Shown piece by piece: positions 2,750-56,561 of a stretch of DNA of 64,000 nucleotides (within the stretch, counting starts at the first letter, position 1; every line of letters begins with the position of its first letter). A program made the translations under genes and the position numbers. The DNA lies in NCBI RefSeq assembly GCF_003918875.1, contig NW_025765443.1:62001-126000 (forward strand), written 5' to 3'. This DNA is from Haliotis rubra. Its lineage: Eukaryota. The notes under the pieces are model-generated. The model had not been told where the DNA came from and made no database searches. It saw only the letters and a list, made by a program, of their open reading frames with translations.

Positions 2750-4720
2750 AACAGTATAATATAAAACATGTGGTCAAGGGACACAAGAGGCACGATCAGT
2801 TCAGTGGTAGTTAAAACGCATTTTAATGCTGTAGTCACTCAGACATACATCGATGAAACCATTGGCGACAAACTTAAGTCACTTAATCATTAATGGCCAA
2901 CTATTGAGCTAACGATAAAATTATGTGTACGTTTGTTAATTACTATACTGTTGTAATCTGCATGTGGTCAACAAATTTCTCTTTCACATTGCTCGGTCCC
3001 TTTGCCACCCTGGAAATAGAGGACGTTAAATGCAAACAATATTGACATCATGAAACATTTATATGCGTACACAGCATGTCCAGATGGTTACTATGGTCCT
3101 AACTGTGGCGTCCAGTGTGGCAACTGTGTGGATGGTGATGTTTGCATCAAGACAAATGGAACATGCCCTGGAGGATGTGCACCAGGATGGTTCAACGAAA
3201 AGTGTAATCAGCGTAAGTCAGCTGCAGTTATTGATAGCGGTAACAACACTATGGTATTTTTTTATGTCTTATGTGTGACTATTCAACAGGAACATTAGCA
3301 AACATATTCCAAATGTACTCTTACGTCTGTGGTGACGGGGAGAAAATATCAAACTACGTCGGTACAACCAAGGTGTAAACAATTGGAGAGCTCTGAAGTT
3401 TGGATACCTCTCGTTCAGATTTGACTTTATCGTGTATCACCATAGGAAATTCCTGGTTAGCATGAACAAGCTTTCAGCAATCATCAAATCAACGTATATA
3501 TACATAGGAACTTGAGCAAACATGTCACGAGTAATGGACAATATGCCCCAAATGTCCTTGACATTTGGTGTTGTATGCATCCTGTTCACACAACAGACAC
3601 ATTTCAACTGCATCACCGAGGCTTATTATTGTTCACTGGGACGTGTTTATGTAACAGCATGCCCAGATGGACGTTATGGTGCCAATTGTGCGTGTCCGTG
3701 TGGTCACTGTCTGGACACTGACGTCTGTGACAAGGTGACGGGGGCATGTCCTGGAGGAAGATGTCAGTCTGGATGGTGGCCAGATTTCTGTTCACAAGGT
3801 TGGTATTAAATCTTCACTTGTTCCTGTTAATATGTCTTAAACGCTTTGTCTTGTCGTTAATGGTTAATAATACTTTACAGCTTGCAGTGACGGTCGTCAT
3901 GGACACCGCTGTTAGTCTGAGTGTGGCCAATGTAAAGGAAACCTGCCTTGTAACAAGGTCAATGGAACATGTCAACAAGGATGTCGGCCAGGGTTTCAAG
4001 AACCCTTTTGTAAAGGTGGGATGCAATTTTGAATGTGACGGAAGTTGTAATTTTTCTACCCTGTCCACTGTCCTGCTTTCTCTTTATATATCTCTTGAGG
4101 GTAACTTGGTAAGACATCAAGGCAGCTGATATGAACCCCTTATTTATGTTTTGAAAGGTTGTACAGAGTGCCCGGCAACGCCAGGATACTCAAACCAAGT
4201 AGTGCCAGTTGCAGCAACACTTGGTACACTTCTCATCTTGGCTCTCATCGCTCTGTTGACATCCATCATTTACATTAGAAGGTACGGGGATGATAAGGTA
4301 TAAACTATATACATTGATATTCACTACGGGGAATGACATTTTGTGCCAATTTGACCAGAGATTATACATTGGAATTCATTTCTTACGGAGAATGATATAA
4401 TGTCTACATCATAATTGTAAGGATTAAAACATTGCAGACTGAAGATTCAACTGGATGCCTCACAAAAGAAACCCGAAGACAACTACATATCCCTAGACGA
4501 GAGAACCAGGGATCCAGTTGTGGAGAACACATATGAATACACTGACAATTCCAATCCTTATGTTAATGCAGTGGAAGTCCCCCAGGGCCGAATTTAAACT
4601 GAATTGTTGCATAAAGCGTCGTGTCTTAATGTACATTGATATAGAGTAGTCTTGTGCAAAGTAAATTGTTCTGAGTGTAGACAAGCGTAGTTTCTCACTT
4701 TAGGTCACTTTTAGAGTATA

Positions 4721-4966
4721 GACCCGTGAAGGTCCAGGTTAGAATCAACCTTCAGTAACCCATGCTTGTCGTAAGAGGCGACTAACGGGATCGGGTGGTC
4801 AGATTCGCTGACTTGGTTGACACATGTCATTGTATCGCACCGTGTAGATCGATGCTCATGCTGCTGATCACTCGATTGTCTGGTCCAGACTCGATTATCT
4901 ACAGACCGCCGCCATATAGCTGGAATATTGCTGACTGCGGCGTAAAGCTCAACTCACTCACTCACT
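4721..4966 (+). mobile_element. SINE-like family S1, full length with (ACTC)n tail
   Basis: Matches other S1 copies and is absent from the paralogous 3' UTR of unit C (~35255). Confidence 0.85.
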
Positions 4967-7079: not shown

Positions 7080-8687
7080 AACAACTTCCTGGTAGCCTGG
7101 ATATGTACTGGTGTTCAGACAGGCGACTGTGGGTTGTTGACGAGAGGTGAGTAGCGCAGGGACATAGTTTAGCTCTTACCCGTTGTATACTGAGTCAAAA
7201 AAGAAACTTCACAAAATGTATTTGAAAAATAATGGGTAATTTTTCTCTGATGATACATCTATGTATCCGAAATTGGATCCCTATCTTTCGACTCTAGAAA
7301 AACGTTAGCAAAACCCACTCAAACCCATCCATACGTCTTGCAAATTACGTTAGTGCCAAATCAGGTTTTGCATGTGCAGTCGACCCCTGAACTCGTGCCT
7401 TTCATGGCGGCTCATGGCCCAGGTCTACAGTTCCAGCATGATAATGTTCGGCCGCATACCGCGATGTTGACACGAAATCTCCTTCAAAACGCTGGAATCA
7501 ACGTCATGGACTGGCAATCGAGGTCCCCTGACCTTAGTCCAATAGATCACGTCACGTTTGGGATGCACTTGAGAGAAGGCTTCGTGGTCTTAGGAACCAA
7601 CCTCAGAATTTGCAGGAACTTGACGCTGCCTTGCAAGAGCAATGGCGCAGAATCCCCAACCACGTGTTCACAAGCATCAGGCAGTCGATGAGGAGACGTT
7701 GTTTGGCAGTGGTGAATGGGCGGGGCGGCCATACACGAAATTGAACTGAGAAATTTCGCATTTTTATTCTTGTGACTTGACATTCTGACCTCAGACCAGC
7801 AACCCGCATCTGATGGCGCTGGTGGAGAAATTACATGTTTTATCTATCGGGCTGTTGAAACATATTCAATTAGAACGGGTATTGCAGCAGTGAACTAAAC
7901 ATTTTGCACCGATCTATTAGGACTCTTAACATTAAGTATAATCCTGTTATTACTTAAATTCAATGCCCAGTGAGGTTTTCTTTATTGAATTGTTCATCTT
8001 TTCAACAACAATGAAAAATGTATCTATCCATCAACTGTATTCATTCAGTAGAGTATACCACAGGCCCATGATACAATAGCAAAACTGGAGTCCACGTCTC
8101 ACGGTGCCTGTTTGTTTCTAATCCACATTACTATGTATATATCAATGGTAAGCGTATTGACCGTGCATTCGTTCGTGTACGCCATTAACAGATTGACTTG
8201 GTGTTATCCAAATTTTCACACAAATGGTAATATTTGAACGTACTGAATCGTCTTTGTAGGCCATACATGGTGTCATGGTTGTTCGTCTGTGTCCTGCGCT
8301 GAGAATGTGGGTTGGAATAACGGATGGGACTCAACACACAACAACACTAAAATGTGTACTTTGTTTAGAAATTTTAATCTTAAATATAACATATGTTATG
8401 TTACATTTAACAACTTTTTGAAAGAAAATGTGTATTCATGTTTGAGTTGGCGAATATGTTTTATCAAAGTGTTAGGTTATAAATGCATTACATACAGTTC
8501 TACATTATGTATATGGTGACTTTATCTGAAAATGTCAACCAATTATCAGTTTGCAGTGATGAGTGGTTTTCTGAAGATTGTGACAAAGAGTGCAGGTGCC
8601 TTAGCAGTGCTGATGTATGTGACAAGCCCACTGGTCGCTGTTCTAGGGGATGTCTCCCAGGATATTATGGAACCGACCGCCAAACAG
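7080..8687 (+). pseudogene. Unit B remnant: putative non-coding first exon (donor after 7146), Tc1-associated deletion, then a single EGF exon 8550-8687
   Basis: The 7000-7180 region parallels 39030-39215 upstream of unit D. Sequence from ~7833 matches the intron after the FTP C-exon (19643+). The exon reads VCSDEWFSEDCDKECRC...GTDRQT. Confidence 0.65.
7189..7832 (+). mobile_element. Internally deleted Tc1-family element
   Basis: TA-tactgagtcaaaaaagaaact terminus; transposase remnant FQHDNVRPH...WQSRSPDLSPIDHV...GGHT. Confidence 0.8.
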
Positions 8688-8726
8688 GTTTGAGCATAGC
8701 TAGAATTTTAGTTAAATTTGATAAAG

Positions 8727-31400: not shown

Positions 31401-34400
31401 CTGCCGCCAGCCACTGACAGGAACCACGGTGACCATACGGATACCTGGTCCACTGAAATTCCTTACTTTGTGTGAAGTGCAGATATTTGGTATGTCATGG
31501 CTATGTGGATTTACATAGTTGGATATATTGTTCATTGGTATGAACTAGAAAAGGTTTCACTATGGATACATGTATTATCTATCGGGCTGTTGAAACGTAT
31601 TAAATTTGAATGGATATTGCAGCGATGAACTAAACACTTTCCACCCATCTATTAGGACTCTTAACATTAAGTATAATCCTGTTATCACTTGAATTCAATG
31701 CCAAGTGAGGTTTTCTTTATTGAATTGTTCAATCTTGTCAACAACAATGAAAAATGTATCTATCCATCAACTGTATTCATTCAGTAGAGTATACCACAGG
31801 CCCATGATACAATAGCAAAACTGGAGTCCACGTCTCACGGTGCCTGTTTGATTCTAATCCACATTACTATGTATATATCAATGGTAAGCGTTTTGACCGT
31901 GCAATCGTTCGTGTACGCCATTAATAGATTGACTTGATGTTATCCAAATTTTAACACCAATGGTAATATTTGAAGGTACTGAATCGTCTTTGTAGGTCAT
32001 ACATGGTGTCATGGTTGTTCGTCTGTGTCGTATGAAAGAGATACCTTGCGTTGAGAATGTGGGTCGGAATAACGGATGGGACTCAACACACAACAACACT
32101 AAAATGTGTACTTTGTTTAGAAATTTTAATCTCAAATATAACATATGTTATGTTACATTTAACCACTTCCTGAAAGAAAATGTGTATTCATGTTTGAAGT
32201 GACGCATATATTTTATCAAAGTGTTAGGGTATAAATGCATCACATACAGTTCTACATTATGTGTATGGTGGCCATATCTGAAAATGTCAACCAATTATCA
32301 GTTTGCAGTGATGGATGGTTTTCTGAAGATTGTGACAAAGAGTGCAGTTGCCGTAGCAGTGCTGATGTATGTGACAAGATCACTGGTCGCTGTTCTAGGA
32401 GATGTCTCCCAGGATATTATGGAACCAACTGCCAAACAGGTTTGAGCATAGTTACAATTTTAGTCAGATGCATTTGATAATACGTCAGATGCATGTTTCC
32501 TTTCCCGAATGAGTTTTTGAGTTAAGTGACCAGTCGTACATTGTATATGTGGAAACAAATAAGTCTCATGGCCAAAATGGACCCATACGCTACTAAACAT
32601 TGACGGTAACACCCCAAAAGGTATGTGCCGAAACAGACAGAACAGATACCATGGTAGCGGTTGGGAGGATCTCATACTTACAATTAATTTGAAGAAAAAA
32701 AACACTTTTGAGTAACGATAGTGGTTGGTTGGGTTGGGCTGGGTAGCGGTTAATTTGGTAGTGGTGGTGGTGGTAGTAGCAGTGGTGGTAGTGGTAGTGA
32801 ATGTGTATTTGTATGTGTGTGTGCGTGCGTATGTGTACGTGTTTGGGGAACGGGGACTTTGTTTCTGTCAATGTATGTCATCGAATAGATACAAAACGTA
32901 TAAACTTCTTCACCAATAGTCAAAAACCAAAACGACTATAGCTTTGTATTTTGTGTTATGATAAACAGGAGTGACTAAACAGGCGATTAAACGGATACCA
33001 AAAGGGGAAAGTTTGAATAACTTTCATAAAGGCAGACGAATAAGTTTGAAAACTATCTGAATTGAATTTATAAAGGAAATCAATGTATATGCGCAACGTG
33101 CAGTCTGGTCATGTTTTCGGATACTCTGTGGTTAAACTAACAGTATTCATGTAGAACCTGTAGAAGTTTGTTCTCATGTGTGACGAGATTTAACATTGAG
33201 AACACTTCCTTGCATTTTTATTGATAATATATACTGTTTTTGACTGTGTGTTACCTTTCCCTCAATATCCAGTGAATGAACTTCATCAAGTGTCATAACG
33301 TTCTTATTTGTTAGGCTAGAATAGGTTGCCACAGCATCAGATTAACTGTGGATGTGGCTAGCCATATTGAAGAGTTCCTCAAAAAACAATTCGTTTATGT
33401 ACACAGCATGTCCAGATGGTTACTATGGTCTGGCCTGTGGCTTCCAGTGTGGCAACTGTGTGGATGGTGACGTTTGCATCAAGACAAATGGAACATGTCC
33501 TGGAGGATGTGTAGCAGGGTGGATTTACGGCAGGTGTAGTCAGCGTAAGTCAATTGCAATGATAACATCAGCAGCAAGATCATGATAGCTTTTAGATCTT
33601 ATGTCTGACTATTCAACAGAACATTGCGGAACATATTCTAAATGAACTGTTGTGTCTGTGGTGACGTCAGGGAGAATACATGACCAAATCTGGTGGTGCA
33701 TCTCAGGGTTGAAAAAATTAAAATAAGTCGGTTCAACCAAGGTGTAAAACATCGGAGAGCTCTGAAGTGGGGATAACTCTTGTTCAGAATGTGACTTTAT
33801 CGTTTATCTCCATGGGAAATTCCTGGTTTGCATGAACAAACTTTTAGCAATGATTATAACAACCTACATAATATACATAGGAACCTCAGCGGACATGCCA
33901 AGAGTAAAGAGCAATATTCCCTAAATGCCCCTGACATTTGATATTGAAATGTTAACTGCATCACAGAGGCTTACACTTGCTTAGACTATTCTTCACCGGC
34001 AGGTGTTAATTTTACATTATACAACATGTCCCGAAGGACATTATGGTGCCAATTGTGCCTCTCCGTGTGGTCACTGTCTGGACACTGGCGTCTGTGACAA
34101 GGTTACAGGCAAATGTCCTGGAGGATGCCAGCCTGGATGGTGGCCAGATTTCTGTTCACAGGGTAGATACTTAATCGCCACTTGTTCCTGCATATCTTAA
34201 ATGTTTTGTCTTTTTGTTAATGGTTAATGATATGTTTATAGCTTGCAGTGACGGTCGCCATGGACTCCACTGTCAGTCTGAGTGTGGCCAATGTAAAGGA
34301 AACCTGCCTTGTAACAAGATCAATGGGACATGCAATCAAGGATGTCAGCCAGGGTTTCAAGAACCCCTTTGTACAGGTGGGATGCATTTTGAATGTGATG

Positions 34401-35149
34401 GCAGTTATAATTTCTCATTATATCGCGGACGCCTGGCAGTTAGATGAAAAATGTATCTTCTCTACTCCCCAGAATGCGTTGATGGAATGTACGGTGATGA
34501 CTGCATGTCACGATGTGGTCAGTGTAAAGACGGCTTAACCTGTGATAAGTCCAGCGGAGAATGTCCCGAAGGATGTCAGGGTAACTTCATGAAAAGCAAT
34601 AAGAAATAATGTATTCTTTCGACCATATGCAAAGGTTTGCTCAGTCATCAAGACGACAGGCAGCTAGATAACTGCTGTTGAAATTCTTATTTTCTATTGA
34701 TATAATGAATGAAGGTAACTTGGTAAGATATCAAGGCAGATGATATGAACCCCTTTTTATGTTCTGAAAGGTTGTACAGAGTGCCCGGCAACGCCAGGAT
34801 ACTCAAACCAGGTGGTGCCAGTTGCAGCAACACTTGGGACACTACTCGTCTTGGCTCTCATCGCTCTGCTGACAGCCATCATTTACAACAGAAGGTAAGG
34901 GGAAGATACTTGATACTTAAGAACAGCGATTGACATTTTGTGCTATATTAACCACATAATCTTATGTATAGGAACGCATTTCTATATTAGAATCATAAGA
35001 ATTGAAACATTTCCGTATATTACAGACTGAGGGTTCAACTGGATGCGTCAGAAAAGAAACACGAAGATAACTACTTGTCTTTAGACGAGAGGACCAAGGA
35101 TCCAGTTGTGGAGAACACATATGAGCACATCGACAATACCACCGAATAA
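28469..35149 (+). CDS. Unit C: F-type lectin/multi-EGF/TM/ITAM-like receptor, best candidate for an intact copy. Exons 28469-28523, 28786-28893, 28993-29211, 31304-31489, 32302-32439, 33407-33544, [34025-34162 acceptor lost], 34242-34376, 34473-34580, 34771-34894, 35026-35149
   Basis: Signal peptide MEWCWVGMLLVCVTVVLT; FTP motifs NIAL..QSS..VDG..CAHT..PTWTVNL..R-x-D..R..LTLCEVQIF; consistent phase-1 junctions; TM VVPVAATLGTLLVLALIALLTAIIY; tail DNYLSL-x12-YEHI. Confidence 0.85.
28575..28683. mobile_element. Palindromic MITE (GGGCC...GGCCC termini, 3-bp TSD tct; PIF/Harbinger-like)
   Basis: Long hairpin; absent in the inverted paralog near 17140. Confidence 0.75.
29281..29403. mobile_element. 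Tc1/mariner-type MITE
   Basis: TIR tactcat(a/g)gaaac(g/a)aataagggaacac with TA flanks; absent in the paralog near 16140. Confidence 0.8.
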
Positions 35150-39663: not shown

Positions 39664-42600
39664 GAATCTAACATCGGAAGGTGCTGGGTGGGATTGCTTG
39701 TGATCTGTGTCACCGTGAACCTCACCGGTAGGGACGTTATTCACTTAATGTAAAACAAGAGTAGCTATGTGTAGGGAAGAGGGCTTACTTTTCAATAATG
39801 CCCAAGGGTCATGTTATATCCAACTTATAAACCGATCGAAGATATACTTTAGATATAATTTCAATACTTAGTATTTACTGTTGAAATCAACTGGGATGAG
39901 ACTGGCAGCCGACGCCTCGCAATGCACGTGCTCCGCGCTACCGTTTCCCTGCACGATAATGTCATATTTTAAGATCGCATTCAGTGATGGCAAGACAAAG
40001 TCGTATCAATCTTCAAAACAAGTAATAATTCAAAGTCAAGGGCTATTCCTCAGAAAAGCCCGAGGCAGAGGGACGTTATTAAGATAATGCCCTGGGCACA
40101 GGGACGTTATTAAGATAATTGCCAGGGGCACAGGGACGTTATTAAGATAATTGCTCGAGGAAGCGAGATTGTATCAGATTTGAGGGATATTACGAGAAAA
40201 AAAGTGTCCCCTAAGAACAATGGAGTGACGTAACTGTCGGTTTATAAGTGCATATAGTGTTTGGACTTGATGAACAAACACTCACTTAGCTATCACTGAA
40301 TGCTAACAATACTGTATTGTATATTTCTAACTGAGTAACAAGCGGAGCCATGTTTTTTGAAACAAATGCAGAATGCCACTGTAATACCACAGAGCTCTGT
40401 GACAAGTTCCCCTCAACTCCCTGTAGTCAGATGGATGGTCAGGACATGTGTCAGGAGGGATGGTTTGGTCCGTGTTGTCAGAAACGTGAGTGTGGAGTTG
40501 ATTGGTAGATGTGGTGAATACACAAAGTTATGAATATGTACATGAGTGGGGGTAGATGAGTAGACGGGTATATGTAAAACAATGATTGCAAGTCACCGAT
40601 ACTTGTGATACTAATTATGTATCTAAATTTCAGAAAACATTGCTTTGCGGAGATCTAGCAGCCAGAGTAGCACACTGACCAATTTTCCAAATCTGTATGG
40701 AGCAGCACTTGGTGTGGACGGCAGAGCCACCACAAATGTCTATAGCTCACCACGGACATGTGCTCATACAAAGAAAGAGACAAATCCAACCTGGACTGTG
40801 AACCTGAACACTTCAGTTCCAGAGAAGATACAACACATCAGACTCTATCTACGTGACGACCGTGAGTGCACGCAGGCACGCACACACGCACGCACGAACG
40901 CACTGTACAGTATAGGATATTTTGTGAGAGGATTATTTAAGGGTGACAACATCCGACACTGCAAGAAATGGCCTCTTTTGAAGGGAATGACAATTTGGCC
41001 TTTCAGTTGGCAACCTTAACATGTACAGCTAAATTCGAAATCAACGAAACGTAACTGAATAAGATTTTAGTGAGCCAGAATGTTTATTATTGTATCGATT
41101 TGTAATAGATTGTTAAGGATGTTTTTTACACACGAATGGTTCCCTTTCAAGAGTCATATTTTGTATTCATCTGAATTTACGTCGAACAAGGTATAGCCTC
41201 ATCAGAAAGGTACAGATTGTTCTGTCCCCATCTGAGTGAAGTAATATGGTTTTGCACCATCTTTAGCAATATTCCAGCAATATTACGTGAATCTCACCTG
41301 AATTAAGCTCATACTCTGTACCATATGAGGTATCGAATCCGGGTTTTAATGCATGACGAGCGGTCGTTTTGACCATTAATGTACGTCATTACATTATAAC
41401 AGTATATATAAATAGCACAAAATAGTTGTGCACTTTCAGTTTCAGACTGAAAGTTATCAAACACGTGAAAATCAACCTCTTCGCATCATACTATGTTGCA
41501 CGTGCAGTACCTATTGCGCTGTCACTGCAGACGTTGTGTCTCTATGTTAAAGATGTAAGCAACTTTCTTGCACTGATGGTCTAAAAATAGCCAACTGCAG
41601 ATATTGTTGGGTACAGAGTATTCATTATCATGTACTGTACTGACATATTGTAGACTATTTAAGTTATTTTACAATTGGTCGTCCTCATTTTAAGACGGGG
41701 CGATGGGGTAGCCAAGTGATTAAAGCGTTCGCCCGTCACGCCGTCAACCCCACATGGGCACGATGTGTGAAGCCCATTTCTGATAAACACCGTAGCAACT
41801 GGTTTTCTATGTTAATGTACAATAATATCAACGGGCATCACTGTATCACTTTGTATTAACTACACACAACACATTAATATAATCAGTACGATAGTTGCTA
41901 ATTGAGCACCTTTGGTTATACAGAAATACATGAAAATTCATGAAATACATGTCCTCATCATCAGTTAACCATTTCGGCAGCAGCAGATGTTGACGAAACG
42001 TGATGAATACAAATACTGTTTCTGTGATGTGACAGATCCACATAGATGTAAACTTTAGCGAAGTCAGTAATAATAATGGCATGCTCTAAAACGCAAACAG
42101 CGTATGTGCCTTTCATGTGTTGTGTGGATATAGTGACACTGTGTTGTCTATGTTATGTGTTCATTGTGTCTGTAAGTCTGTAAAACCCGTGGTTAGAATA
42201 TTGCCCTTCAACATGCTGGTTTCAGCAACCCGTGCTTGTCGTAAGAGGCGACTAACGGGATCGGGTGGTCAGGGGTCGCTGACTTGGTTGACACATGTCA
42301 TCGGTTCCCAATAGCGTAGATCGATGCTCATGCTGTTGATCACTGGATTGTCTGGTCCAGACTCGATTATTTACAAATCGCCGACATATAGCTGGAATAG
42401 TGCGGCGTAAAACTAAACTCACTCACTCACTGTTAGTCTGTAATTTGTGCCTGCATGCGCGCGCGTGCGTTTTATGCGTGTTGTGTTGCGTGTATGTGTG
42501 TCTAATGTGCGTGTGCAAGCGCGTGAGTGTGTGTGTGTGTTAGGCTTATATGTGCGTATATTGTGTTGATGTCTTTTCTGGAAAAATGTTAGTGTAAAGC

Positions 42601-45600
42601 GTTGGTGGCTAGTCTGACAGGTAAAACTGAATTATGCGGTAAGATTTGAACTGCATACGATTCGCTTTACCGTGGTTCATATCCGAGCTTGCAAAGCAGA
42701 ATTTGTGTTATCTTTCATAACTCAAGTCATCTATGTTCATTTAACGTGTTCCACTGATGCAACACAATTAATACTTATGACATTTCTCAATCATTTTTTA
42801 ACAGTTCAGGAGAGAAGCAACGGCATGGAGATACTTGTGGGCAGCCAGATGTGCTACAACTGGTCATCAACTGAACATCCTCCTCCTATAGCTAACGTCA
42901 CCTGCCGCCAGCCACTGACAGGAACCACGGTCACTATACGGATACCTGGTCAACTGAAATATCTTACTTTGTGTGAAGTGCAGATATTTGGTATGTCATT
43001 AATAGGTATATGAACAGATACCAAAAGAATAATAATGAACTGACAACAAACTATATCGGAAAACGCCACCCAACATTTGCAATTCAGGCCACGTTCATTG
43101 TTTATAACACTGACGTTAGATCGGATTAATCGATCCTTCTTCCGCAATGAAATATGAAAAACAGTAAATGCTGTTAGAAATTACATCAGCATATTCCGTC
43201 TTTTACATCTTTTAGGTTCATCATGAATGCATGTAAATCAAAATCTTATAGTTTAACTGTAATTCTGTGTTGAACAATACAAGTTTGCAGTAACGGATGG
43301 TTTTCTAAAGATTGTGATAAATACTGCCGCTGCCTTAACAGTACTGATGTATGTGACAAGATCAGTGGTCACTGTTCTAGTGGATGTTTCCCTGGTTATC
43401 ATGGCACTGACTGCCAAACAGGTATGTGCTGAAAATACAAAAATAGCAACTAGACTGTGTACAAAGTATATAATTTTAGTTCAAATAAACGGTTTATCAA
43501 GTTATTATCCTTTATTGTTTAGACTCTTGTGAAGACTGTGCAAATAATTTCGGATTTCCAATACGACGATTTACGCAAAACAGAAATGTGAACTGGACTT
43601 TTATTTGTAAGGCTATCCCCTCTTGTGCATGAGGGGATGTGCATTTGCATGGATTTGAATGACGACACAATGTTATGTCTACAACGTTAGTACTGATATC
43701 TGGCACCTATGAAGGGCCACCTCCTCGTGGTGGGTGCTGGGTCATGCTAAGCGCCCTTCAACTCCCCGTTGTGGACCCGTGGGGATATTTGGGCAACCAA
43801 CCCGTTTGCCGTGGGTTGCGCCCCTGTGTCGGTGGAGGACGGGTGGCTGGTGGTTGAGGGCACTGGTTCCAGGAACAGTGTTCCTTTGCCCAACACACCA
43901 CTTCGCCCCTTACTTCACCTAGACGGGTGGTTGAACTGGCCCGGTTCAATCAATCGTCTGGTCACGCCAAGCCCTGTGCTACAACTGTAAAATGTTGCAC
44001 AAAATTTGAGAATTATTATATGATATTTTTAAATCTTGGCAATTTTTGAACTTTGAATTTTTGAATTTCAACTGCACAATTTCATGTAAGTTTTTGCCTA
44101 GAGTCGTATGCCCAGAAGGCGGTGGCTCATTGGCCAATCTGGTGGATTCATTAATCTTTTAATTTTCTGTTGGAGTATGTCATCCGGGTATCCTTGGTGC
44201 TGCAAGTCGGAGATCCGCTTGTTTTTAGCATCGTCCTTGTGATACTCCATGGTGGGTGGGGAGCTCGGATGATGAAATCTAACACAATAACCATGGCTTA
44301 CGAAACCCCAACAAAAGAACCAAACGTCCTCTTGACAATGACCCGGTTGATGATGACCACAGACTGCCTAAGTCGATTGAGTATTGGCCACGTTTCCTTG
44401 TGATCGAGACTCTAGACAAGAGTCCATTAAAGTTGAACCCTTTTGCAGTATCTAAGGGTATTCAAGGTATTGCTGGGGATGTAAAGAACATTAAACGTCT
44501 CCGTTCAGGTGCGCTGCTAGTTGAATGTGCGAAAAAATCGCAATCAACAAACTTGATGAATACAGAATTGTTCGTTGGCATTCAGGTCTCGGTCTCTGCT
44601 CACAAAACTTTGAACACAAGTAAAGGAAACGTCAGAGACCGGGACAGATTGTTTGATGATATGTCAGAACTTGACATAGTATCAGAAATGAAAGATCAAG
44701 GTGTTCTTTACGTTAAGCGCTTTACAACCCGAAAAAACATTGAAACTTTCAGAACGAATACCTATCTGTTTTCCTTTTCATCTCCAAATGCTCCCAAATC
44801 GCTGAAGGCAGGTTGCTGTAACATTCCCGTTGACACCTACATCCCTAACCCACTCAGGTGTTTTAAATGCCAGAAATATGGACACGGTGTAAATACTTGT
44901 ACATTGTCTGTTGTGTGTGCTCACTGTGGTGAGAAGACACACACAACAGAAGATTGTAACAGTACTTTTAAAAAATGCACCAACTGCTCGGGCGACCATT
45001 CAGCTTTTTCTAAAGAGTGTCCCATTTGGAAAGAGCAAATGGCAATTAACAAAATCAAATTTACCCAAAATATCACTTTTTCTGAGGCAAAAAAACTGGT
45101 AAAGAGATCCGATCTTCCAGAGAGTTGTGCTGCAGTAGCCAAAACACCATCTGAGTCTAGCTCTAAAATAACAAAATCATCCACTAGCTGCCAAACAACC
45201 TTGACTTGGGTCAAAGGGGACTTTCCAAAGAATTTGTACCCTGAGATATCGTCTCAGACTGAAGAATCACTTCCTGGTACGTCAAAATCTTCTTCTGATC
45301 ATAAATCTTCCTCTCAATCACGCTCACTCACTCAATCGTCATCTGAAAATCAACAAATTGTTCAAAGTAAAGGTAAGCCTAAGCCTGATGCTAACAAGAA
45401 ACAAAGTGGCAGAGCTCCAGAGGGGTCGCAAAATAAAATTCAGTTGTTTAACAAATATGGATCTCTTGAGGACATGGACGTATCTGAAAACGTCCATTCT
45501 AGGGCACATAGCTTGTCGCCCTCAAAACAAGTGCGGGGTAGATCCCGAATAAATCCCCCCAAAAGATAATGTCTTCTATTAATCTTGTACAGTGGAACTG

Positions 45601-48600
45601 CAGAGGACTAAGGAAAAATTTCAATGATTTGCAGCTATTAGTCCAGGACTTCACACCATCAGCCATTTGTCTCCAGGAGACATACTTAAAACAGACGGAT
45701 ACATTCGATTTACGTTATTTCAATGCATACCATTCCTTTTCACCTCCAGGTGATCGGGCCACTGGAGGATCTTCGATCCTTATCAAGCAAAATGTTATCC
45801 ATAGCCCTGTTATACTTACTACTGGTTTCCAGGCGGTTGCCGTACGACTGAGGTTACATGTTGCGTTCACATTATGCTCTTTGTACATCTCCCCATCTTC
45901 AACTCTTCAGAAGACTGACCTTCAATATTTATATGACCAACTCCCGAAACCTTGTATCATTATGGGAGATTTAAATGGCCACAACCCGCTCTGGGGTGGT
46001 ACAACTACTAATGCTAAAGGTAAACTATTAGAAGAGTTTTGTTCAGACAATGATTTATGCATATATACTGACGGTTCTAGCACATATTTACATCCTGGTA
46101 CAGGAACTTATTCAGCTCTTGATTTATCAATTACTGACCCAGACTTATTTCATGAATTCGAGTGGTCAGTCCACGACGACCTGTGTGGAAGTGACCATTT
46201 CCCAACAATACTAAAACCCGTGAATCCATCTGATGTTCCTCCATCATCAAGATGGAACTTTAAGAAGGCTAACTGGCCTTTATATGAAACTTTCTGTACT
46301 GACAAACTGAAACCCGAACTTTTTCGTGATCTTCCTGATGCCATCAAATGTTTTTCAGATGAGCTCAGACACATAGCTGACAAGTGTATCCCCAAATCCT
46401 CTGCAGTTCCTCATGTACGTAAACCATGGTTTAACGCTGAATGCAAACAAGCTCGCAAGGCACGGAAAAAGCTGAAAATTATTTCCGTTGTCATCCTATG
46501 GTCCACAATTTAAACAAATTTAGAATTTTAAACGTCAAAGCACGGCATACTTTTAAACAAAATAAACGCCAATCTTGGCGAAGTTATGTCTCAAACATCA
46601 ATTCGCGCACGCCGATATCAAAGGTGTGGAACATGATTCAGAAAATAAGGTAAGGGCTCTAAATCTAGCATTAAGCATCTAAAAAGTGGAAATGAATTAT
46701 TAACTGATAAATCTGACATAGCAAATACTGACTGAGTTTAGTTTTACGCCGCTTTTAGCAATATTCCAGCAATATCACGGCGGGGGACACCAGAAATGGG
46801 CTTAACACATTGTGCCCATGTGGGGAATCGAACCCGGGCCTTCGGCGTGACGAGCCAACGCTTTAACCACGAGGCTACCCCACCGCCCCACATAGCAAAT
46901 AAACTTGGAGAAACTTTGGCCAAACATTCTTCCTCATCTAACTATGTACCTGAATTCCAGAAATATCAAAGACAGCAGGAAAAGAAATCTATTAATTTCA
47001 ATTCAGACAATGGGGAAGACTACAATGAAACCTTTTCGATACATGAGCTTCATACTGCTCTTGACCAAGCTCACGATACTGCTTCAGGAGCTGATGGCAT
47101 ACATTATCAACTCCTGAAGCACTTGCCTGAATCATGTTTAGAGACGCTCCTATCTATTTTTGATGACATTTGGACATCTGAACAATTTCCTTCGTCGTGG
47201 CGCGATGCTATAATTGTGCCCATCCCTAAACCTGGACGTGATCATACTGATCCTTCCAGTTATAGGCCAATTTCATTAACTAGCTGTGTTTGCAAGACCA
47301 TGGAACGCATGATAAAAAATCGACTTGTTTGGTACTTGGAAACCAATAACCTTATAACTAATATACAATGTGGTTTCCGTAAAAACCGTAGTACCATCGA
47401 TCATTTAGTGCGCTTAGAATATTTTGTGAAAAATGCCATAATTAATAAACAACATGCAGTGTCGATCTTTTTCGATTTAGAAAAAGCATACGACACAACA
47501 TGGAAACATGGGATTTTAAAAGATTTACATGACTTTGGATTACGAGGCCGTTTGCCTCGCTTTATATCCAACTTTTTAAATAACAGGCAATTACAAGTCC
47601 GAGGGGGTTCAACCCTGTCTGACCATTCTAATCAGGAACAGGGAGTCCCGCAAGGCAGTATTTTGTCTGTAACACTCTTTAGCATCAAGATTAACAGTTT
47701 ATCAAAGGTTTTAAAAGATTATATTACTGGATCTCTTTTTATGGATGATTTTAATATTTCTTGTCGCGGTAAAACTATGCATACTATTGAACGGCAAATG
47801 CAGCTGTGTTTAAATAAAATACATAAATGGTGTCTTGAAAACGGCTTTAAATTTTCTAAATCCAAAACTAATTGGATACACTTTTGTAGAAAATATAAAC
47901 CGCGTAAAGACCCGGAACTGTTCCTCAATGGCACTCCCATCAAAATTGTGAAGGAGGCCCGGTTCTTGGGCTTAATTTTTGACTCGCATCTGACTTTTCT
48001 TCCCCATATCAAGTCACTAAAAACTAAATGCTTGAAGTCACTTGACTTGTTGAAAGTCGTTGTCAATTCTAAGTGGGGAGGGGATCAAGCTACCCTCCTA
48101 CAATTATATCGATCATTGGTACGTTCCAAACTTGATTATGGCTCCATCGTTTATGGTGGAGCCTGCAACAGTAATCTAAAACTTTTAGATTCTGTCCACC
48201 ACCAAGGTCTAAGACTAGGTCTTGGTTCCTTTAGAACTTCACCTGTTGACAGCCTTTACGTCGAGGCTGATGAGCCATCTCTTACACAACGCCGTATAAA
48301 AGTAACTTTACAGTATATTACAAAACTTTATTCCAATGAGTTAAACCCTGCATATAACCGTGTCTTTAATCCACTATATGAAGATCTGTATAACAAGAAG
48401 CCTTCTCTTGTTCCGCCTCTGGGATAAGAGTGAAACCTTTCCTTTCTGCTGCTGGCATTGAGCTAGAACATATAGCTCCTTCCCGTTTTCTTTCTTCTCC
48501 GCCTTGGCAGTTGGTTAGGCCACAAGTTGACCTAACATTAATTACATTTAAAAAATCAGAAACAAATGAATTGCAGTATAAACAAGAATTTAGTCAATTA

Positions 48601-51600
48601 AGAATTAAATATAATACATACAAATCCTTATTTGCAGATGGGTCCAAGGATGGTGGCGCAGTAGCATGTGCCACTGTCATTGGATCCCGAACAATATCTT
48701 CTAGAATACCGGATAACAGCTCTATATTTACAGCAGAAGCAAACGCCATCTTAACAGCTCTTAAATATATTAATAAACACCGTAAATTTAAACAATATAT
48801 CATCTTTTCAGATTCTCTTTCGTGTCTTCAGGTTATTAAAAATCTTTCTTGCAAACATCCACTTTTATTAGAAATTATTGAATTGTACAATGAACTTGCT
48901 ACTGGCCAATGCGACTTGTTGGTTGCCCAGCCACGTTGGCATTTCTGGGAACACGATGGCTGATATTGCTGCTAAGGCAGCCCTCAACAAATCTGTGACA
49001 CCACATCGTATCCCATACTCTGATTATAAAGCCAGCATTAGAACATACATCCGCGATCTAATGCAAAAGAAGTGGGGCACCCAAGTAGGTATTAATAAAT
49101 TACATGCAATAAACCCTACATTGGTTACGCCTACTAGGGTTGTCAGTCCAGATTTGAAGAGGTCATTATGCGACGATGTCGCATTGGCCACACTAGATAT
49201 ACTCACCAATATTTACTGAAAGGCGAAGATCCTCCGTTTTGCATCCCTTGTGATGAAAGAATCACAGTCAAGCATGTCCTGCTTGACTGTGTTGAATATT
49301 CCATCACAAGGGATAAGTATTTTTAATTTCAAGACATTGAAGGATCTTTTTCATAATGTTAATTATCATTTAATAGTTGAATTTTTAAGAGAATTAGATT
49401 TGTGGACTGATCTGTAAATAGTTAAATATTATATTATTGGTAGTTTCTATTAGTAACTGAGATTGTTAGTGGATGTACCCTTAAAGGGGGTTGACGTAGC
49501 GTAAAATTATTGTCCTCCTGAGAGGGTACGTAAGTCCCAAAACCTTCAAAGTAAATTTAAACTTGCCAGGATTTTTAAACGTAGTATTCTTGTTCTATTA
49601 ATTTTGGCTAACATTTCTTCCAATCGCCAGCAGCTGAAGGGATGGTGTAAATCCAGCTAGGGCCCATGCAGGTAGCAAAAGTAATGTAAGTCCCCATGGT
49701 CCCTAGTATGGTCATCTACCTTCAGTTGTTGGCGATCTATTGCCTATTTTTATATTGTGCTGTCCCCTAAAGTTAAAAAGTTTTAGATTTAATTACTAGT
49801 TTTACATGTATATCTGTGATATTCTAGTTGTTTCACTGTCCTTCGTCGGCAGGTTTTTTATGATATCTGTATATATATTCTATTTAAATGTCAAATGTTC
49901 TCGTCACGATATGGCTGAAATATTGCCGATGTGACGTTAAATATTAACTCACTCACTCACTAGTACTGATATCTTAGTACGATATTGATAAATGGATATT
50001 TGTCAACAAACGTAATAATTTATAATTTGAGTCCATACCGACGGGGTGAACAGTAAATATCTGTGTGTTTGTGCAGCTTGTCTAGGTGGTTCTTATAGAA
50101 CTAACTGTGCCTCCAAGTGTGGAAGCTGCCTTAATGGTATCATATGTAGTAAGACAAACGGAATATGTCCTGGAAGATGTGCCTCAGGGTGAATGAGGGA
50201 CAACACTATGTTATGTCTGCAGCGTGAGTTCTTGGAAAAGTTGCATTTGGAAAGTTGCATTTGAAGTCAAATAGATATTGACTGAAAGGTATTAGCTGTG
50301 GTAGAACAAACGGTCCTGGGGAATGTCCATCAGAATGGCAGAGAGCCTACGAAGTAAGTCTGTATGATTAAAAGAAGGTTAAGCTTGTAGTTTACTACTA
50401 CATATTGTTTTTGTGTTTGCAGGATGTCCAGATGGTTCCTATGGTAGCAACTGCTCCTTTCAGTGTGGAAACTGTCTCAGTGGTGTCAGCTGTGACAAGA
50501 CAAACGGTACCTGTCCTGGAGGATGTGCAGCAGGATGGCAGAGTGATACAACATGTCTACAAGGTGGGTCTGTACGATTTGAAGAGATTGCTAACCCTGC
50601 AGAATACTGTTACTGGATGACTTCATTATGTGTATGTGTGTGTTTGCAGCATGTCCAGATGGTTCTTATGGTATCAACTGCTCCTCCCGGTGTGGAAACT
50701 GTCTGGATGGTGTCAGCTGTGACAAGGCCTTGGGAACATGCCCTGGAGGATGTGCAGCAGGATGGATGAATGACGGCACGTGTCTACAACGTGAGTAACA
50801 ATGGCGTATATTGCACTTAAGGGATATATATATAACAATTAGGTTAATGAACTGAAATTCAAATCTATAGCATATGTACACTCATGTGCCAAAATTGTTT
50901 CAATTTTCAAGATGGCAGATATTTCGGTCTCGTCCGGTTATGGATAATAAAGAATGTGTTGCTTACCTTATCGGTGTCCTGTTGCTTTTTCACATAGTTT
51001 TTCAACATACCAAACATTTTTTATTGGGTTAAAATCTGGACTCTGTGCTGGCCATGGTAGCTGAGGAATGTCATTCCTGCGTTTCCATGTTTCCGTCTCA
51101 AGGGACCGATGCATCGGTGCATTATCATCTTGAAACAGCCATGGTTTGTCAAGGAAATGCTTTACTACAACAGGCCACAAAAAGTTGTCAAGTGTATCAA
51201 TATACTTAGCACTGTTCATGTTCCCATCGACAAACACCAAACACCCCACACCGTAATACGTAATGCACCCCCACATCATCAACTTCATAGACAGCCCTAT
51301 TCCCTGAGTGAAATACCCGAGACACTCGACCCTCCATCTTTCTGATCACTTTCGCCACACTTTCACTCTTCTATCAGGTTTAGCAACAATAGTCATTTCA
51401 TCGGTAAAGATGACCCTTTTCCAGTCCCTATCAACATTCCAACGAATTTTTTCTCTACACCATGCCACAAGTTTTTTCCTGTTGACCTTTCGTATTCCCA
51501 GCTTTTTGCAAACAGTCCGTCGAACAAATCCCAGTGAATGTAAATTTCGTTGAACATGTTCTTTTTGGAAAAGGTTGTTGCACAGACTGATTAAAAATGT

Positions 51601-54600: not shown

Positions 54601-56561
54601 AGAGTATAGACATGGTCAATTGTTGAGTAATTTTGGCGAAAGCCAGCTTGAGCTTCACACATAATCTAAATAGATTTATAAATTACATTCACAGTTCTCT
54701 ATTTATCTGACCACATTTGTGTGTTTTTTCTGACCCCTACAGAGAAGTGTTCCGGCTGGGGAATCCCAGTGACAGCTGTTCTTGGTGTGTTGCTGATCTG
54801 CACAGTGACTGGTGGAACCATATACATCAGACGGTAGTATATTTTGCCTCTTTCGTACAAATACCCACATGTTTCCGAACAGCATTGTATATTGAAATAG
54901 TATCTTGCGGCTATGTAATCACCTGATAGGAATGATAGGCAATGGTTCGTTAAACTATACTTAACTGTGACACAAACGTTTCTTAAGAGAATGCTAACAG
55001 TCATTTTAAACATTGTGCTGAAAAATATGTTTAAGTGATAGCCTCTTCTTGAGCAAGCAAACACTTATGTTTTATCCTCTTTACATGCCGATCCAATTAG
55101 CTATGCAGTGTCAAATATAAAGTTATTTTGTGTTGCCCATTCTTGTTGGATTGGTTCTTTGTGCATTAAATCGTAATTTCTGCTCTGATTGGCGAACTCA
55201 GAACTTGGTCCAAGTAGGCTTCAAGTATACTGATGATCTGTTTTGTTCAATACCCACACAAGCGACAAATATAACTTCTTCTCCAGCGTGTCCAAATGAA
55301 ATACTTTAGAGTACAATTTTACCAACAAGATCTGATTCTTTCTCCGAAGTTGTTGGATTCAGGTTGCAGCATTCGGGGCCTTAGTACAGTCTTCGAAATG
55401 TTTCATGGTAAACATTTAGATGCCCTTTCCAAATTTGACGCTTAGACGAAAATGATGCCCCATGCACGCAGTTCCTTATTTTGTACCACATGTTCCACGT
55501 TTGTAAGTGAACACTTGTCTCTGCAGGTGTTTGCTGCAGGTGCACTGGTGTGGAATGATAGGCTCACCTTTTCACCTGTTACTAGCTGGTATAATATACA
55601 TTCGATAGTAATTCAGAAACACAGGCTGTTGATATTGTCGGAACCGCACAATCAACTCGAGTCGACTGTCCAGATTTCGTATGAATATAGAAAGGCTTTC
55701 GCCGCTTGTGAAACAATATTTCAGAGGTTTGCAAACATTCCAAAATATCTGGTGCACACAGCAAAAACGACTCGACCCCGTCCTAATTCATTTGGCTGAG
55801 AACACCCTTTGACAATATGCTGTTTTGGTTTCAAAATAATAGAGTTCATCTGCATGGACTCTCAGTTTGCAATGTGTAAATAATTTGTTTATGTAGTGAA
55901 GTGATTATGGGTACAACTTCATCGCCATACTGAATGAACTTTGACTTTAGATATTCGTGATGTCAGAAAATCATTCTTCCTCCGGGAAAACCTAACTCTT
56001 GCAAGAAATAGGGCTCCAAACTTTGCATTCATAAGGTATTTCCTATTCTAAATGGTTGTGCACTAGTTCTTGCAGAACATTTCAGAATTCTTTGAGCTTC
56101 AGCTTCTAGATTTAAGGACGGGATCCATTATTAGCAGGTGTCGGGCGAACATTCACAAATAAAAAACGTTTGAAATCATAAAGTATACAATACCTACATT
56201 TCTTAACCTATTAAGATCCTTTTTGAGCCGTTGACCTACACAATACTTTCATGTACTATTAGCCTCAGTGTCTAAGTTTTGTTTTAACTGTGACACAATA
56301 TAAAAGTTTCCACAGCTTAAATCAAGGGCCTTTTTGTTTGTTTCACGTTAGGGTTCTGTTTTCTGAATTTTACCAAATAGCAATAACTATTTTCCCGTCA
56401 AATTACTGAAACACCTGGAGAGCTTGAAGACAAAAAAGAGAGCGGAACACTATGTGACACTTGATGAGAGGACAAAGACAACAGAAAGTACCTACGAACA
56501 TATCGACAATGCAACGCCTTACTACAATACAGTCAATCATCTTCAGGATGAAACTTTATGA
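39664..56561 (+). CDS. Unit D: F-type lectin/multi-EGF/TM/ITAM-like receptor (start codon uncertain). Exons 39664-39727, 40372-40485, 40634-40861, 42805-42990, 43284-43421, [50077-50223 with TGA], 50423-50563, 50650-50790, 53249-53329, 54743-54833, 56381-56561
   Basis: Paralogous exons with AG/GT borders and matching phases; TM WGIPVTAVLGVLLICTVTGGTIYIRR; tail EHYVTL-x10-YEHI..PYYNTV. Functionality depends on skipping 50077-50223 and on an upstream ATG. Confidence 0.75.
40060..40160. repeat. Minisatellite, ~30-bp unit x3
   Basis: ggca(g/c)agggacgttat(t)aagataat(t)gc repeated. Confidence 0.8.
42185..42431 (+). mobile_element. SINE-like family S1
   Basis: S1 body and actcactcac tail. Confidence 0.8.
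43702..43760 (+). ncRNA. HDV-like self-cleaving ribozyme at the LINE 5' end (predicted)
   Basis: GGCACCT A TGAAGGGCC ACC TCCTCGT GGT GGGTGCT GG GTCAT GCTAA GCGCCCTTCA; differences from 22607 preserve pairing. Confidence 0.8.
46728..46889 (-). mobile_element. tRNA-derived SINE (family S2) nested in LINE ORF2
   Basis: 12-bp TSD acatagcaaata; head ggggcggtggggtagcctcgtggttaaagcg...ggttcgattccc. Confidence 0.9.
50877..52060 (-). mobile_element. Decayed Tc1-family element
   Basis: Frameshifted fragments SGRP, IFTDE, FQDDNAPMH, WPAQSPDFNPIKNVW; right boundary uncertain. Confidence 0.85.
53900..54660 (-). mobile_element. Decayed LINE reverse-transcriptase fragment (different clade; CR1/RTEX-like)
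   Basis: QAGFRQNYSTIDH, GVRQGENLSPFLFAIYLND and LLYADDIVL on the minus strand. Confidence 0.75.

What the first reader, a model, noticed from the sequence alone, without database searches (positions are those of the whole stretch)
4438..56561. Cytoplasmic tails carry ITAM-like dual-tyrosine motifs that differ between paralogs
C: EDNYLSL-x12-YEHI then stop. D: EHYVTL-x10-YEHI plus PYYNTV. A: EDNYISL-x12-YEYT (second half-site degenerate) plus NPYVN. YxxL/I-x(6-12)-YxxL/I is the ITAM pattern bound by Syk/Shark-type tandem SH2 kinases, and YxN is the Grb2-SH2 preference. The first tyrosine, DERT and TYE are kept while the rest of the tail diverges. Inference: paralogs differ in signalling output as well as ligand.
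Basis: partly seen in the sequence, partly recalled or inferred. Interest (0 to 1): 0.7.

Follow-up and report, generated by a model that had tools for sequence, protein, structure and literature searches.

The report
Abalone lectin-EGF receptor tails, ITAM-like tyrosines
Three neighbouring abalone genes for sugar-binding, EGF-repeat surface receptors end in short tails with a conserved pair of tyrosine motifs that resembles the activation motif of immune and engulfment receptors. Its function is untested, and most differences between the three copies sit beside signs of gene decay.

Summary
All quoted motifs sit at the stated coordinates and in the stated frames. Each tail is a last exon entered from a transmembrane exon through a phase-2 intron. 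For gene C that junction appears in transcript contigs of four runs from one study.

The tail occurs only in abalones (Haliotis rubra, H. cracherodii, H. asinina). Across 15 tails the core ExxYxxLD-(12 residues)-ExTYExI is nearly invariant, usually followed by PYxN, and tail exons show dN/dS of 0.16-0.42. It fits the relaxed ITAM rule (spacing 6-12, as used for Draper) but fails the strict rule (6-8) and gets no Pfam ITAM hit. The tail has no NPxY and no detectable similarity to Draper or MEGF10 tails. Binding of Syk or Shark is plausible but untested.

The claim that paralogs differ in signalling output is weakly supported.
- Gene A (YEYT) has a premature stop and a truncated EGF exon.
- Gene D (10-residue spacer) has lost the canonical acceptor of its tail exon and has a stop in one EGF exon.
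- Gene C lost the third tyrosine by a deletion, and that short form is expressed.

This scan has noted the same kind of tail before on other DNA of this genome.

The parts
4158..4281 (+). Gene A transmembrane exon (CTECPATPG..., hydrophobic span, ...IIYIR); ends AGA AG|gt, phase 2
4438..4597 (+). Gene A tail exon: Y1 in EDNYISL, 12-residue spacer, Y2 in YEYT (derived, +3 is Thr), Y3 in NPYVN, stop 4595-4597
3913..3915 (+). In-frame TAG inside gene A EGF exon (about 3878-4015), where relatives have CAG (Gln)
320..403 (+). Gene A first EGF exon, similar to relatives only up to CDKIT; the rest of the domain is missing
28785..34594 (+). Gene C ectodomain exons: Cys-rich head and F-type-lectin-like domain (28785-29207, 31309-31489), then EGF exons 32302-32439, 33403-33544, 34025-34162, 34242-34376 and 34473-about 34594. 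Lesions relative to transcripts: acceptor AA at 34023-34024 and an in-frame TAA at 34607-34609 in place of the usual exon end
34771..34894 (+). Gene C transmembrane exon; ends AGA AG|gt, phase 2
35026..35149 (+). Gene C tail exon: Y1 in EDNYLSL, 12-residue spacer, Y2 in YEHI, then DNTTE and stop; the third tyrosine site is deleted relative to A and relatives
40368..50795 (+). Gene D ectodomain exons: 40368-40487, 40633-40857, 42804-42989 (lectin-like), then EGF exons 43277-43420, 50076-50225 (TGA at 50190-50192), 50425-50562 and 50649-50795. A LINE reverse-transcriptase ORF (46742-48424) lies in the long intron
54743..54833 (+). Gene D transmembrane exon; ends AGA CG|gt, phase 2
56381..56561 (+). 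Gene D tail exon. The canonical start is 56402, but the acceptor at 56400-56401 is AA (AG in three related loci). An in-frame upstream AG (56379-56380) would add 7 residues. Y1 in EHYVTL, 10-residue spacer (2-residue deletion), Y2 in YEHI, Y3 in PYYNTV, stop 56559-56561
56548..56655 (+). Degenerate partial tandem copy of the distal tail in the 3' UTR of D, in another frame, with Y2 changed to His

Best explanation
The three exons encode the cytoplasmic tails of tandem paralogs of an abalone-only family of single-pass receptors. The architecture is a signal peptide, a Cys-rich head, an F-type-lectin-like domain, MEGF10/Tie2-type EGF repeats, a transmembrane helix and a tail of about 50 residues. 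The family tail carries a conserved module, ExxY1xxLD-(12)-ExTY2ExI-...-PY3xN, held by purifying selection. The most likely function is phosphotyrosine docking. On clustering by a glycan ligand, a Src-family kinase would phosphorylate Y1 and Y2. The doubly phosphorylated pair would recruit a Syk-family kinase through its tandem SH2 domains, with spacing like Draper (11) or, from my own knowledge, FcgammaRIIA (12). pY3-x-N would recruit a Grb2-type adaptor. Shown here: exon structure and frame, expression of the C-type tail, restriction to Haliotis, conservation and low dN/dS. Inferred: phosphorylation, the identity of the readers, and any downstream output. The differences between the three window copies are best read as birth-and-death decay of array members (A and D damaged, B only fragments) plus one real expressed variant (C without Y3), not as tuned signalling outputs.
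For: Motifs and frames. The TM-to-tail splice 34894|35026 is seen in four runs, with the C-type stop kept as TAG. A tail-profile search of 1.84 billion representatives returns five true hits, all Haliotis. Further H. asinina and H. cracherodii members. In the 15-tail alignment, columns at 85% or more are E, Y1, L, D, T, E, T-Y2-E, I and T; the spacer is 12 in all but window D, and three other tails break a half-site. Tail dN/dS is 0.16-0.42. The lectin-like head matches the fucolectins 1k12 and 3cqo at Z 12.7 and 12.6 with 25-30% identity. The EGF repeats match Tie2. Literature: Draper ITAM YxxI/L-x6-12-YxxI/L at Y934/Y949 binds Shark (PMC6219719); Jedi-1 ITAMs bind Syk (PMC4055271); oyster CgIgR ITAM co-precipitates CgSyk (PMC6994640); ITAM spacing is given as 6-12 (PMC3576117, PMC5557797). 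Decay.
Against: There is no Pfam ITAM hit and spacing lies outside the strict 6-8 rule. The relaxed pattern arises in 0.3-2.4% of composition-matched shuffles. The tail has no NPxY and no detectable similarity to Draper, MEGF10 or Jedi tails. An abalone Syk gene was not examined here; only oyster Syk and a red-abalone TULA entry come from papers (PMC6994640, PMC13344425, PMC10253181). Both Yxx[LI] sites also fit generic YxxPhi sorting signals. The RNA runs are only a guess at RNA and are contigs 90-99% alike, so they may come from a relative or a paralog. The dN/dS values rest on 120-160 bases.
Confidence: 0.5

Rival explanations
1. The conserved tyrosines are YxxPhi sorting signals. YxxL and YExI would bind the mu2 subunit of AP-2 in unphosphorylated form and drive constitutive or ligand-induced endocytosis of a scavenger-type lectin receptor, with no SH2-based signalling.
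For: Both sites fit Y-x-x-[L/I]. The receptors have scavenger or engulfment-type ectodomains. The tail is short with no other recognisable motif. The role of YxxPhi is established knowledge of clathrin adaptor sorting.
Against: Conservation extends well beyond Y and the +3 residue (Glu at -3 of both sites, LD, T-Y-E). The spacer length of 12 is kept in both subfamilies although about half its residues differ. A third conserved Y-x-N has no sorting meaning. Sister genes of the family with tyrosine-phosphatase tails, as annotated next to L003 and in earlier scan notes, point to phosphotyrosine biology.
Confidence: 0.2
2. One reading: the paralogs are functional receptors whose tails have diverged adaptively. 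Under this view C is a pure ITAM, D is an ITAM plus a Grb2 site, and A is a hemITAM-like single site plus a Grb2 site, so each ligand specificity is wired to a different output.
For: The sequence differences are real. The truncated C tail is expressed with its stop retained. The first site of A keeps acidic residues at -3 and -2, partly like a hemITAM (PMC3576117).
Against: A has a premature TAG, a truncated EGF exon and a dead pseudo-exon. D lacks the canonical tail acceptor and has a TGA in an EGF exon. YEYT and the x10 spacer are unique derived states among 15 tails. hemITAMs need three acidic residues at -2 to -4, and here there are two at most.
Confidence: 0.15
3. The ITAM resemblance is coincidental. 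The tail is conserved for another reason, such as binding an abalone-specific partner, a membrane-proximal structure or a dimerisation role, and the tyrosines are not phosphorylated.
For: The relaxed pattern occurs by chance in up to 2.4% of shuffles. The tail is lineage-restricted with no homology to known signalling tails. There is no Pfam ITAM hit.
Against: Both tyrosines and their +3 residues are among the few near-invariant columns in two subfamilies and three species. Copies that lose them also show relaxed constraint or breakage: the L002 upstream copy has omega above 1, and the L004 copy has a stop at Y1.
Confidence: 0.15

Closest known systems
Draper (Drosophila), CED-1, MEGF10 and Jedi-1/MEGF12 engulfment receptors
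   Same: Single-pass receptors with arrays of MEGF/laminin-type EGF repeats. The tail has two Yxx[L/I] sites 15-16 residues apart (Draper Y934/Y949; here Y1 to Y2 is 16), which in Draper and Jedi-1 bind Shark or Syk (PMC6219719, PMC4055271). RefSeq names the abalone proteins MEGF10, draper-like or PEAR1-like.
   Different: The abalone tail is about 50 residues, far shorter than those of Draper and MEGF10 (the Draper tail holds 13 tyrosines, PMC6219719; its length is my own recollection). It has no NPxY site for CED-6/GULP. It is not retrieved with, and does not retrieve, Draper or MEGF10 tails. The N-terminus is an F-type-lectin-like domain; no EMI domain was detected by Pfam. These are not orthologs.
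Canonical ITAM adaptors and receptors (CD3, Ig-alpha/beta, FcR-gamma; FcgammaRIIA as the long-spacer case)
   Same: Two ExxYxx[L/I] half-sites. The 12-residue spacer equals the upper bound quoted for ITAMs (PMC3576117, PMC5557797) and, from my own knowledge, the FcgammaRIIA spacing.
   Different: Spacing lies outside the usual 6-8. There is no Pfam ITAM hit. The motif sits on the ligand-binding chain itself, and binding to a tandem-SH2 kinase is untested.
hemITAM C-type lectin receptors (CLEC-2, Dectin-1, CLEC9A)
   Same: A lectin-type receptor with YxxL preceded by acidic residues (E-D-N-Y in A and C, E-E-H-Y in most D-type relatives). This would allow single-site signalling in a dimer even if the second site is lost, as in A.
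   Different: hemITAMs have three acidic residues at -2 to -4 and sit in N-terminal tails of type II C-type lectins (PMC3576117). Here there are at most two acidic residues, the receptor is type I, and the lectin is F-type-like.
Oyster CgIgR-CgSyk pathway
   Same: A mollusc hemocyte receptor whose tail ITAM co-precipitates with a mollusc Syk and promotes phagocytosis (PMC6994640). It shows that the proposed reader exists in molluscs.
   Different: CgIgR has an Ig-domain ectodomain and what the authors call a classical ITAM. It is a bivalve protein, not a gastropod one, and has no sequence relation to the abalone tail.

Membership tests
ITAM (strict: [DE]xxYxx[LI]-x6-8-Yxx[LI]; Pfam PF02189) | Two Yxx[L/I] half-sites | tested here: met
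   C has YLSL and YEHI; D has YVTL and YEHI. A fails at the second site (YEYT). Twelve of 15 family tails have both sites.
ITAM (strict: [DE]xxYxx[LI]-x6-8-Yxx[LI]; Pfam PF02189) | Spacer of 6-8 residues between half-sites | tested here: not met
   The spacer is 12 (A, C and nearly all relatives) or 10 (window D). It falls within the relaxed 6-12 range used for Draper and in reviews (PMC6219719, PMC5557797).
ITAM (strict: [DE]xxYxx[LI]-x6-8-Yxx[LI]; Pfam PF02189) | Acidic residue upstream of the tyrosines | tested here: met
   Glu at -3 of Y1 is conserved in at least 85% of the 15 tails; window D itself has Ala at -3 and Glu at -2. Glu at -3 of Y2 is present in all three window tails and in at least 85% of the 15.
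ITAM (strict: [DE]xxYxx[LI]-x6-8-Yxx[LI]; Pfam PF02189) | Match to the curated ITAM profile | tested here: not met
   hmmscan of the three tails against Pfam-A at E up to 0.1 found no family.
ITAM (strict: [DE]xxYxx[LI]-x6-8-Yxx[LI]; Pfam PF02189) | Phosphorylation by Src-family kinases and binding of Syk/ZAP-70/Shark tandem SH2 domains | not testable with these tools
   This needs peptide binding or cell assays. The presence of an abalone Syk gene was not examined here.
Draper/CED-1/MEGF10 engulfment receptor family | Array of MEGF/laminin-type EGF repeats and a single transmembrane helix | tested here: met
   Exons show the repeated CPDGxYGxNCxxxCGxC... pattern. P0001 matches the Tie2 EGF region at E 1.5e-07. 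Pfam gives weak EGF_laminin and EGF_PEAR1L hits.
Draper/CED-1/MEGF10 engulfment receptor family | N-terminal EMI domain | tested here: inconclusive
   Pfam finds no EMI in P0001, P0008 or P0009. The head folds as an F-type lectin or galactose-binding-like domain, but the first 50 or so residues are modelled poorly.
Draper/CED-1/MEGF10 engulfment receptor family | NPxY motif for CED-6/GULP in the tail | tested here: not met
   None of the 15 tails contains NPxY. NPYVN in A is N-P-Y, not N-P-x-Y.
Draper/CED-1/MEGF10 engulfment receptor family | Tail homologous to Draper/MEGF10 tails | tested here: not met
   The tail profile against 1.84 billion proteins returns only Haliotis proteins plus one unrelated weak hit.
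hemITAM | Three acidic residues at -2 to -4 of a single YxxL | tested here: not met
   A and C read P/H-E-D-N-Y (two acidic). D-type relatives read R-E-E-H-Y (two). Window D reads R-A-E-H-Y (one). The definition is from PMC3576117.
F-type lectin (fucolectin) domain | F-type lectin fold | tested here: met
   The model of P0008 residues 25-206 matches 1k12_A at Z 12.7 (134 residues aligned, 25% identity) and 3cqo_A at Z 12.6 (30% identity), just above CBM32 and discoidin domains. Caveat: mean pLDDT is 54.7 and only the C-terminal half is confident. Pfam F5_F8_type_C_2 scores E 6.6e-05, below its cutoff.
F-type lectin (fucolectin) domain | Fucose-binding His/Arg/Arg triad | not tested
   No residue-level structural alignment was made.

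The most novel reading that the evidence does not exclude
Abalones evolved a lineage-specific, long-spacer (x12) ITAM on the ligand-binding chain of F-type-lectin/EGF receptors. It recruits Syk and Grb2 on glycan binding. Together with sister genes that carry tyrosine-phosphatase tails on the same kind of ectodomain, it would form a paired activating/phosphatase glycan-sensing receptor system, assembled independently of vertebrate immunoreceptors and of Draper.
Probability: 0.25. Interest if true: 0.65.

Novelty: new variant of a known kind. Interest (0 to 1): 0.38.

Why it matters
If the tail really is a working ITAM, it would be a convergent case of ITAM-Syk wiring placed directly on a lectin-EGF pattern-recognition receptor in a gastropod. 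That would extend the Draper-Shark and oyster IgR-Syk precedents and give a handle on how abalone hemocytes turn glycan recognition into uptake or activation, which is relevant to disease in farmed abalone. As it stands, this is a conserved but untested motif in genes that RefSeq already annotates as MEGF10 or draper-like. In this window it also shows how quickly copies in such arrays decay.

Tried and rejected
1. Pfam on single exons and on full-length relatives gave only sub-threshold EGF_laminin, EGF_PEAR1L and F5_F8_type_C_2 hits and no ITAM. NCBIfam gave nothing.
2. Word-index protein searches are limited by length. The tail region of P0001 found 3 proteins and that of P0003 found 6, so a fuller census of tails was not possible.
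3. The look-up of encoding contigs failed for isoform P0003; the longest isoform P0008 worked.
4. A tyrosine-phosphatase partner gene was looked for in the window by tblastn and none is present.
5. An ITIM or ITSM reading was considered. Y1 has Asp or Glu at -2, so it is not an ITIM. Y2 has Ser at -2 only in D-type tails. This was judged over-reading and not pursued.
6. The paper search for abalone Syk found nothing specific.
7. The structure model of the head was of low confidence, so only the fold-level match is used.
8. Spliced models were never joined for a search. Exons were searched by reference one at a time and the joined step was left out. Frame continuity was checked by phase arithmetic and by the transcript joints.
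Full report
**Observation**

A six-frame search places every quoted string on the + strand at the coordinates given.
- A: EDNYISL 4475-4495, YEYT 4532-4543, NPYVN 4553-4567.
- C: EDNYLSL 35063-35083, YEHI 35120-35131.
- D: EHYVTL 56445-56462, YEHI 56493-56504, PYYNTV 56517-56534.

DERT follows the first site in all three. The open stretches are short (47-64 codons), as expected for terminal exons. tblastn with the three tails finds no fourth tail exon in the window, only a degenerate partial copy just 3' of the D stop at 56548-56655. The window has no N runs and is 39% G+C.

**Frame and splicing**

Each tail follows a transmembrane exon that ends two bases into an Arg codon.
- A: AGA AG|gtacgg, exon end 4281.
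- C: AGA AG|gtaagg, exon end 34894.
- D: AGA CG|gtagta, exon end 54833.

The A and C tail exons start one base before the reading frame, after ...ttgcag (4438) and ...ttacag (35026). I laid contigs of four small runs from one study on 31000-35400. The runs are only a guess at RNA, but their contigs skip introns. All four show a GT..AG joint that, with the stated +2 shift, is exactly 34894|35026. The same contigs run on into the C 3' UTR and keep the stop at the same codon (TAA to TAG at 35149) and YEHI (35131 C>T is synonymous). The short C-type tail is therefore expressed in that organism. Loose ends show a paralogous transcript with the same splice and a long tail reading ...PYINAVEVPQ. The contigs are 90-99% alike, so they may come from a close relative or from paralogs. 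They show the form, not this exact allele.

**What the genes are**

Stop-to-stop ORFs and tblastn with full-length relatives give the layout, all on the + strand.
- Gene A: its 5' end lies before the window; it runs from 3 to 4597.
- B: fragments only (8540-8686, 19394-19564, 20366-20512, and inverted N-terminal exons at 16220-17255). Cysteines are lost and there is no transmembrane or tail exon.
- Gene C: 28785-35149.
- Gene D: 40368-56561, with a 6.6-kb intron holding a LINE reverse transcriptase.
- Gene E: starts at 61986.

Ectodomain exons repeat the MEGF/laminin-type pattern CPDGxYGxNCxxxCGxC...CPGGC. P0001, a 761-residue H. cracherodii relative, matches the Tie2 EGF region in the PDB (E 1.5e-07). 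The head domain of P0008, modelled from an 8-sequence alignment, has low mean confidence (pLDDT 54.7, with the C-terminal half at 70-88). Its best structural matches are the fucolectins 1k12 (Z 12.7, 25% identity) and 3cqo (Z 12.6, 30% identity), just above CBM32 and discoidin domains. Pfam gives a sub-threshold F5_F8_type_C_2 hit. The proteins are thus F-type-lectin-like head, EGF stalk, transmembrane helix and short tail.

**Distribution and conservation of the tail**

A profile of the three tails (A1) was searched against 1.84 billion representative proteins. It returned six hits at E of 0.001 or less. Five are real and all are Haliotis (H. rubra, H. cracherodii and one Logan contig). The sixth is an unrelated repeat protein. 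RefSeq names the abalone proteins 'multiple EGF-like domains protein 10', 'protein draper-like' or 'uncharacterized'. Region-restricted word searches added H. asinina and H. cracherodii members. Genomic loci L001-L004 added further copies.

In the alignment of 15 tails, the columns conserved at 85% or more read L, L, K, E, Y1, L, D, T, E, T-Y2-E, I, T. This amounts to ExxY1xxLD-(12)-ExTY2ExI. Most tails continue with PY3xN. Two subfamilies exist: an A/C type with spacer DERTKDPVVENT and a D type with spacer DEKTKTTATEST. They differ at about half the spacer positions but keep its length at 12.

The exceptions are informative.
- Window A has YEYT.
- P0005 has YENT.
- An H. asinina upstream copy has Y1 shifted, and its omega is above 1 against its relatives.
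- A copy in L004 has a stop at the Y1 codon.
- Window D has a 2-residue spacer deletion.
- Window C and P0005 lack Y3, and P0010 has Asn in its place.

Nei-Gojobori dN/dS for tail exons is 0.16-0.42 for all pairs except those involving the H. asinina upstream copy. These are small samples but consistently below 1.

**How ITAM-like is it?**

Papers on Draper, CLEC-2 and Fc receptors define an ITAM as two Yxx[L/I] sites separated by 6-12 residues (PMC6219719, PMC3576117, PMC5557797). The Draper sites are Y934 and Y949, 15 residues apart, and bind Shark tandem SH2 directly. Jedi-1 ITAMs recruit Syk (PMC4055271). Here Y1 and Y2 are 16 apart, and Glu at -3 is near-invariant before both in the family (window D has it at -2 before Y1), so C and most relatives fit the relaxed rule; window D fits it too, with its 10-residue spacer.

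They fail the strict 6-8 spacing, and the Pfam ITAM model gives no hit. Shuffles of the same composition match the relaxed pattern in 0.3% (C), 1.3% (A) and 2.4% (D) of trials. The pattern alone is therefore weak evidence, and conservation is what counts.

The first site (E-D-N-Y-x-S-L) partly resembles a hemITAM but has two, not three, acidic residues at -2 to -4 (PMC3576117). From my own knowledge of SH2 specificities, pYExI is close to the Src-family optimum pYEEI and pYxN is the Grb2 preference; neither was tested here. The tail has no NPxY and no detectable homology to Draper or MEGF10 tails, so the resemblance is functional or convergent, not orthology. Syk-family kinases and an ITAM-Syk receptor pathway are documented in oysters (PMC6994640, PMC13344425), and a TULA-family protein is listed for red abalone (PMC10253181). 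I could not check for an abalone Syk gene.

**Do the paralogs differ in output?**

The sequence differences are real, but they sit in damaged copies.

Gene A:
- Its first EGF exon is similar to relatives only up to CDKIT (320-403).
- A pseudo-exon at 2108-2239 has a TGA (2198) and lost cysteines.
- The EGF exon at about 3878-4015 has TAG at 3913-3915 where relatives have Gln.

Gene D:
- It has TGA at 50190-50192 in an EGF exon that a homolog's isoform skips.
- The acceptor of its tail exon reads AA at 56400-56401, where H. rubra and both H. asinina loci read AG.
- An in-frame AG 21 bases upstream could rescue the tail with 7 extra residues, but this is untested.

Gene C:
- It has AA instead of AG at 34023-24.
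- One EGF exon ends differently from the transcripts, with an in-frame TAA at 34607-34609.
- An in-frame alternative donor at 34580|34581 and the phase-1 symmetry of EGF exons could still give an open product. That is inference.

YEYT and the x10 spacer are derived and unique among the 15 tails. They are more simply explained by relaxed constraint in a birth-and-death array than by tuned signalling. The loss of Y3 in C is the one difference shown to be expressed.

**Verdict**

The ITAM-like reading is reasonable at the level of the family but unproven. The paralog-specific signalling inference is mostly not supported for this window. Earlier notes of this scan reported the same class of abalone tails on other DNA of this genome and reached similar cautions. 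I re-derived the abalone restriction and the strict-rule failure independently. Novelty is modest: a lineage-specific variant of a known kind of receptor tail, in genes already annotated as MEGF10 or draper-like.

Noticed in passing
window 56548-56655; L002 23728-23832 and 1067-1156: A partial tandem duplicate of the distal tail-coding segment sits just after the stop of D-type genes, in another frame and decaying (Y2 is His in the window copy). It is present in both H. rubra and H. asinina, so the duplication predates their split.
   Followed up: partly
window 46742-48424 (+): A 561-codon ORF with a reverse-transcriptase domain (RVT_1, E 4e-39), a LINE-type insert, lies inside the 6.6-kb intron of gene D.
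   Followed up: partly
window 14127-15107 (+) and 10504-11202 (-): Tc1/mariner-type transposase ORFs (DDE_3 and HTH_Tnp_Tc3_2) lie between the gene fragments of the B region.
   Followed up: partly
window 11440-12212 and 12434-13179: A direct repeat of about 0.8-1 kb whose ORF pieces are 100% identical at the protein level in the self-comparison. A third, more diverged copy lies near 22252-22882.
   Followed up: no
window 8540-8686, 16220-17255 (-), 19394-19564, 20366-20512: Gene fragments ('B'): lectin and first-EGF exons with cysteines replaced, plus inverted N-terminal exons, without transmembrane or tail exons. These are remnants of duplicated array members.
   Followed up: partly
P0010 (H. 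rubra XP model, 1217 aa): This RefSeq model reads through a complete tail-type gene into out-of-frame EGF exons and a tyrosine-phosphatase domain. It looks like an annotation fusion of two neighbouring genes. Its tail has Asn in place of Y3.
   Followed up: no
L004 3099-3248: An H. rubra tail copy with a stop codon exactly at the Y1 position, 23 kb upstream of the intact P0009 tail. It is another dead array member.
   Followed up: no
L001 3500-3655 and 24840-24995: Two tail exons in H. cracherodii, 21 kb apart, encode identical peptides. This points to recent tandem duplication or gene conversion.
   Followed up: no
L003 1-2066: A gene ending in tyrosine-phosphatase domains lies 8 kb upstream of the tail-type gene P0008 in H. 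rubra. This is the same tail-or-phosphatase neighbourhood that earlier scan notes describe.
   Followed up: no
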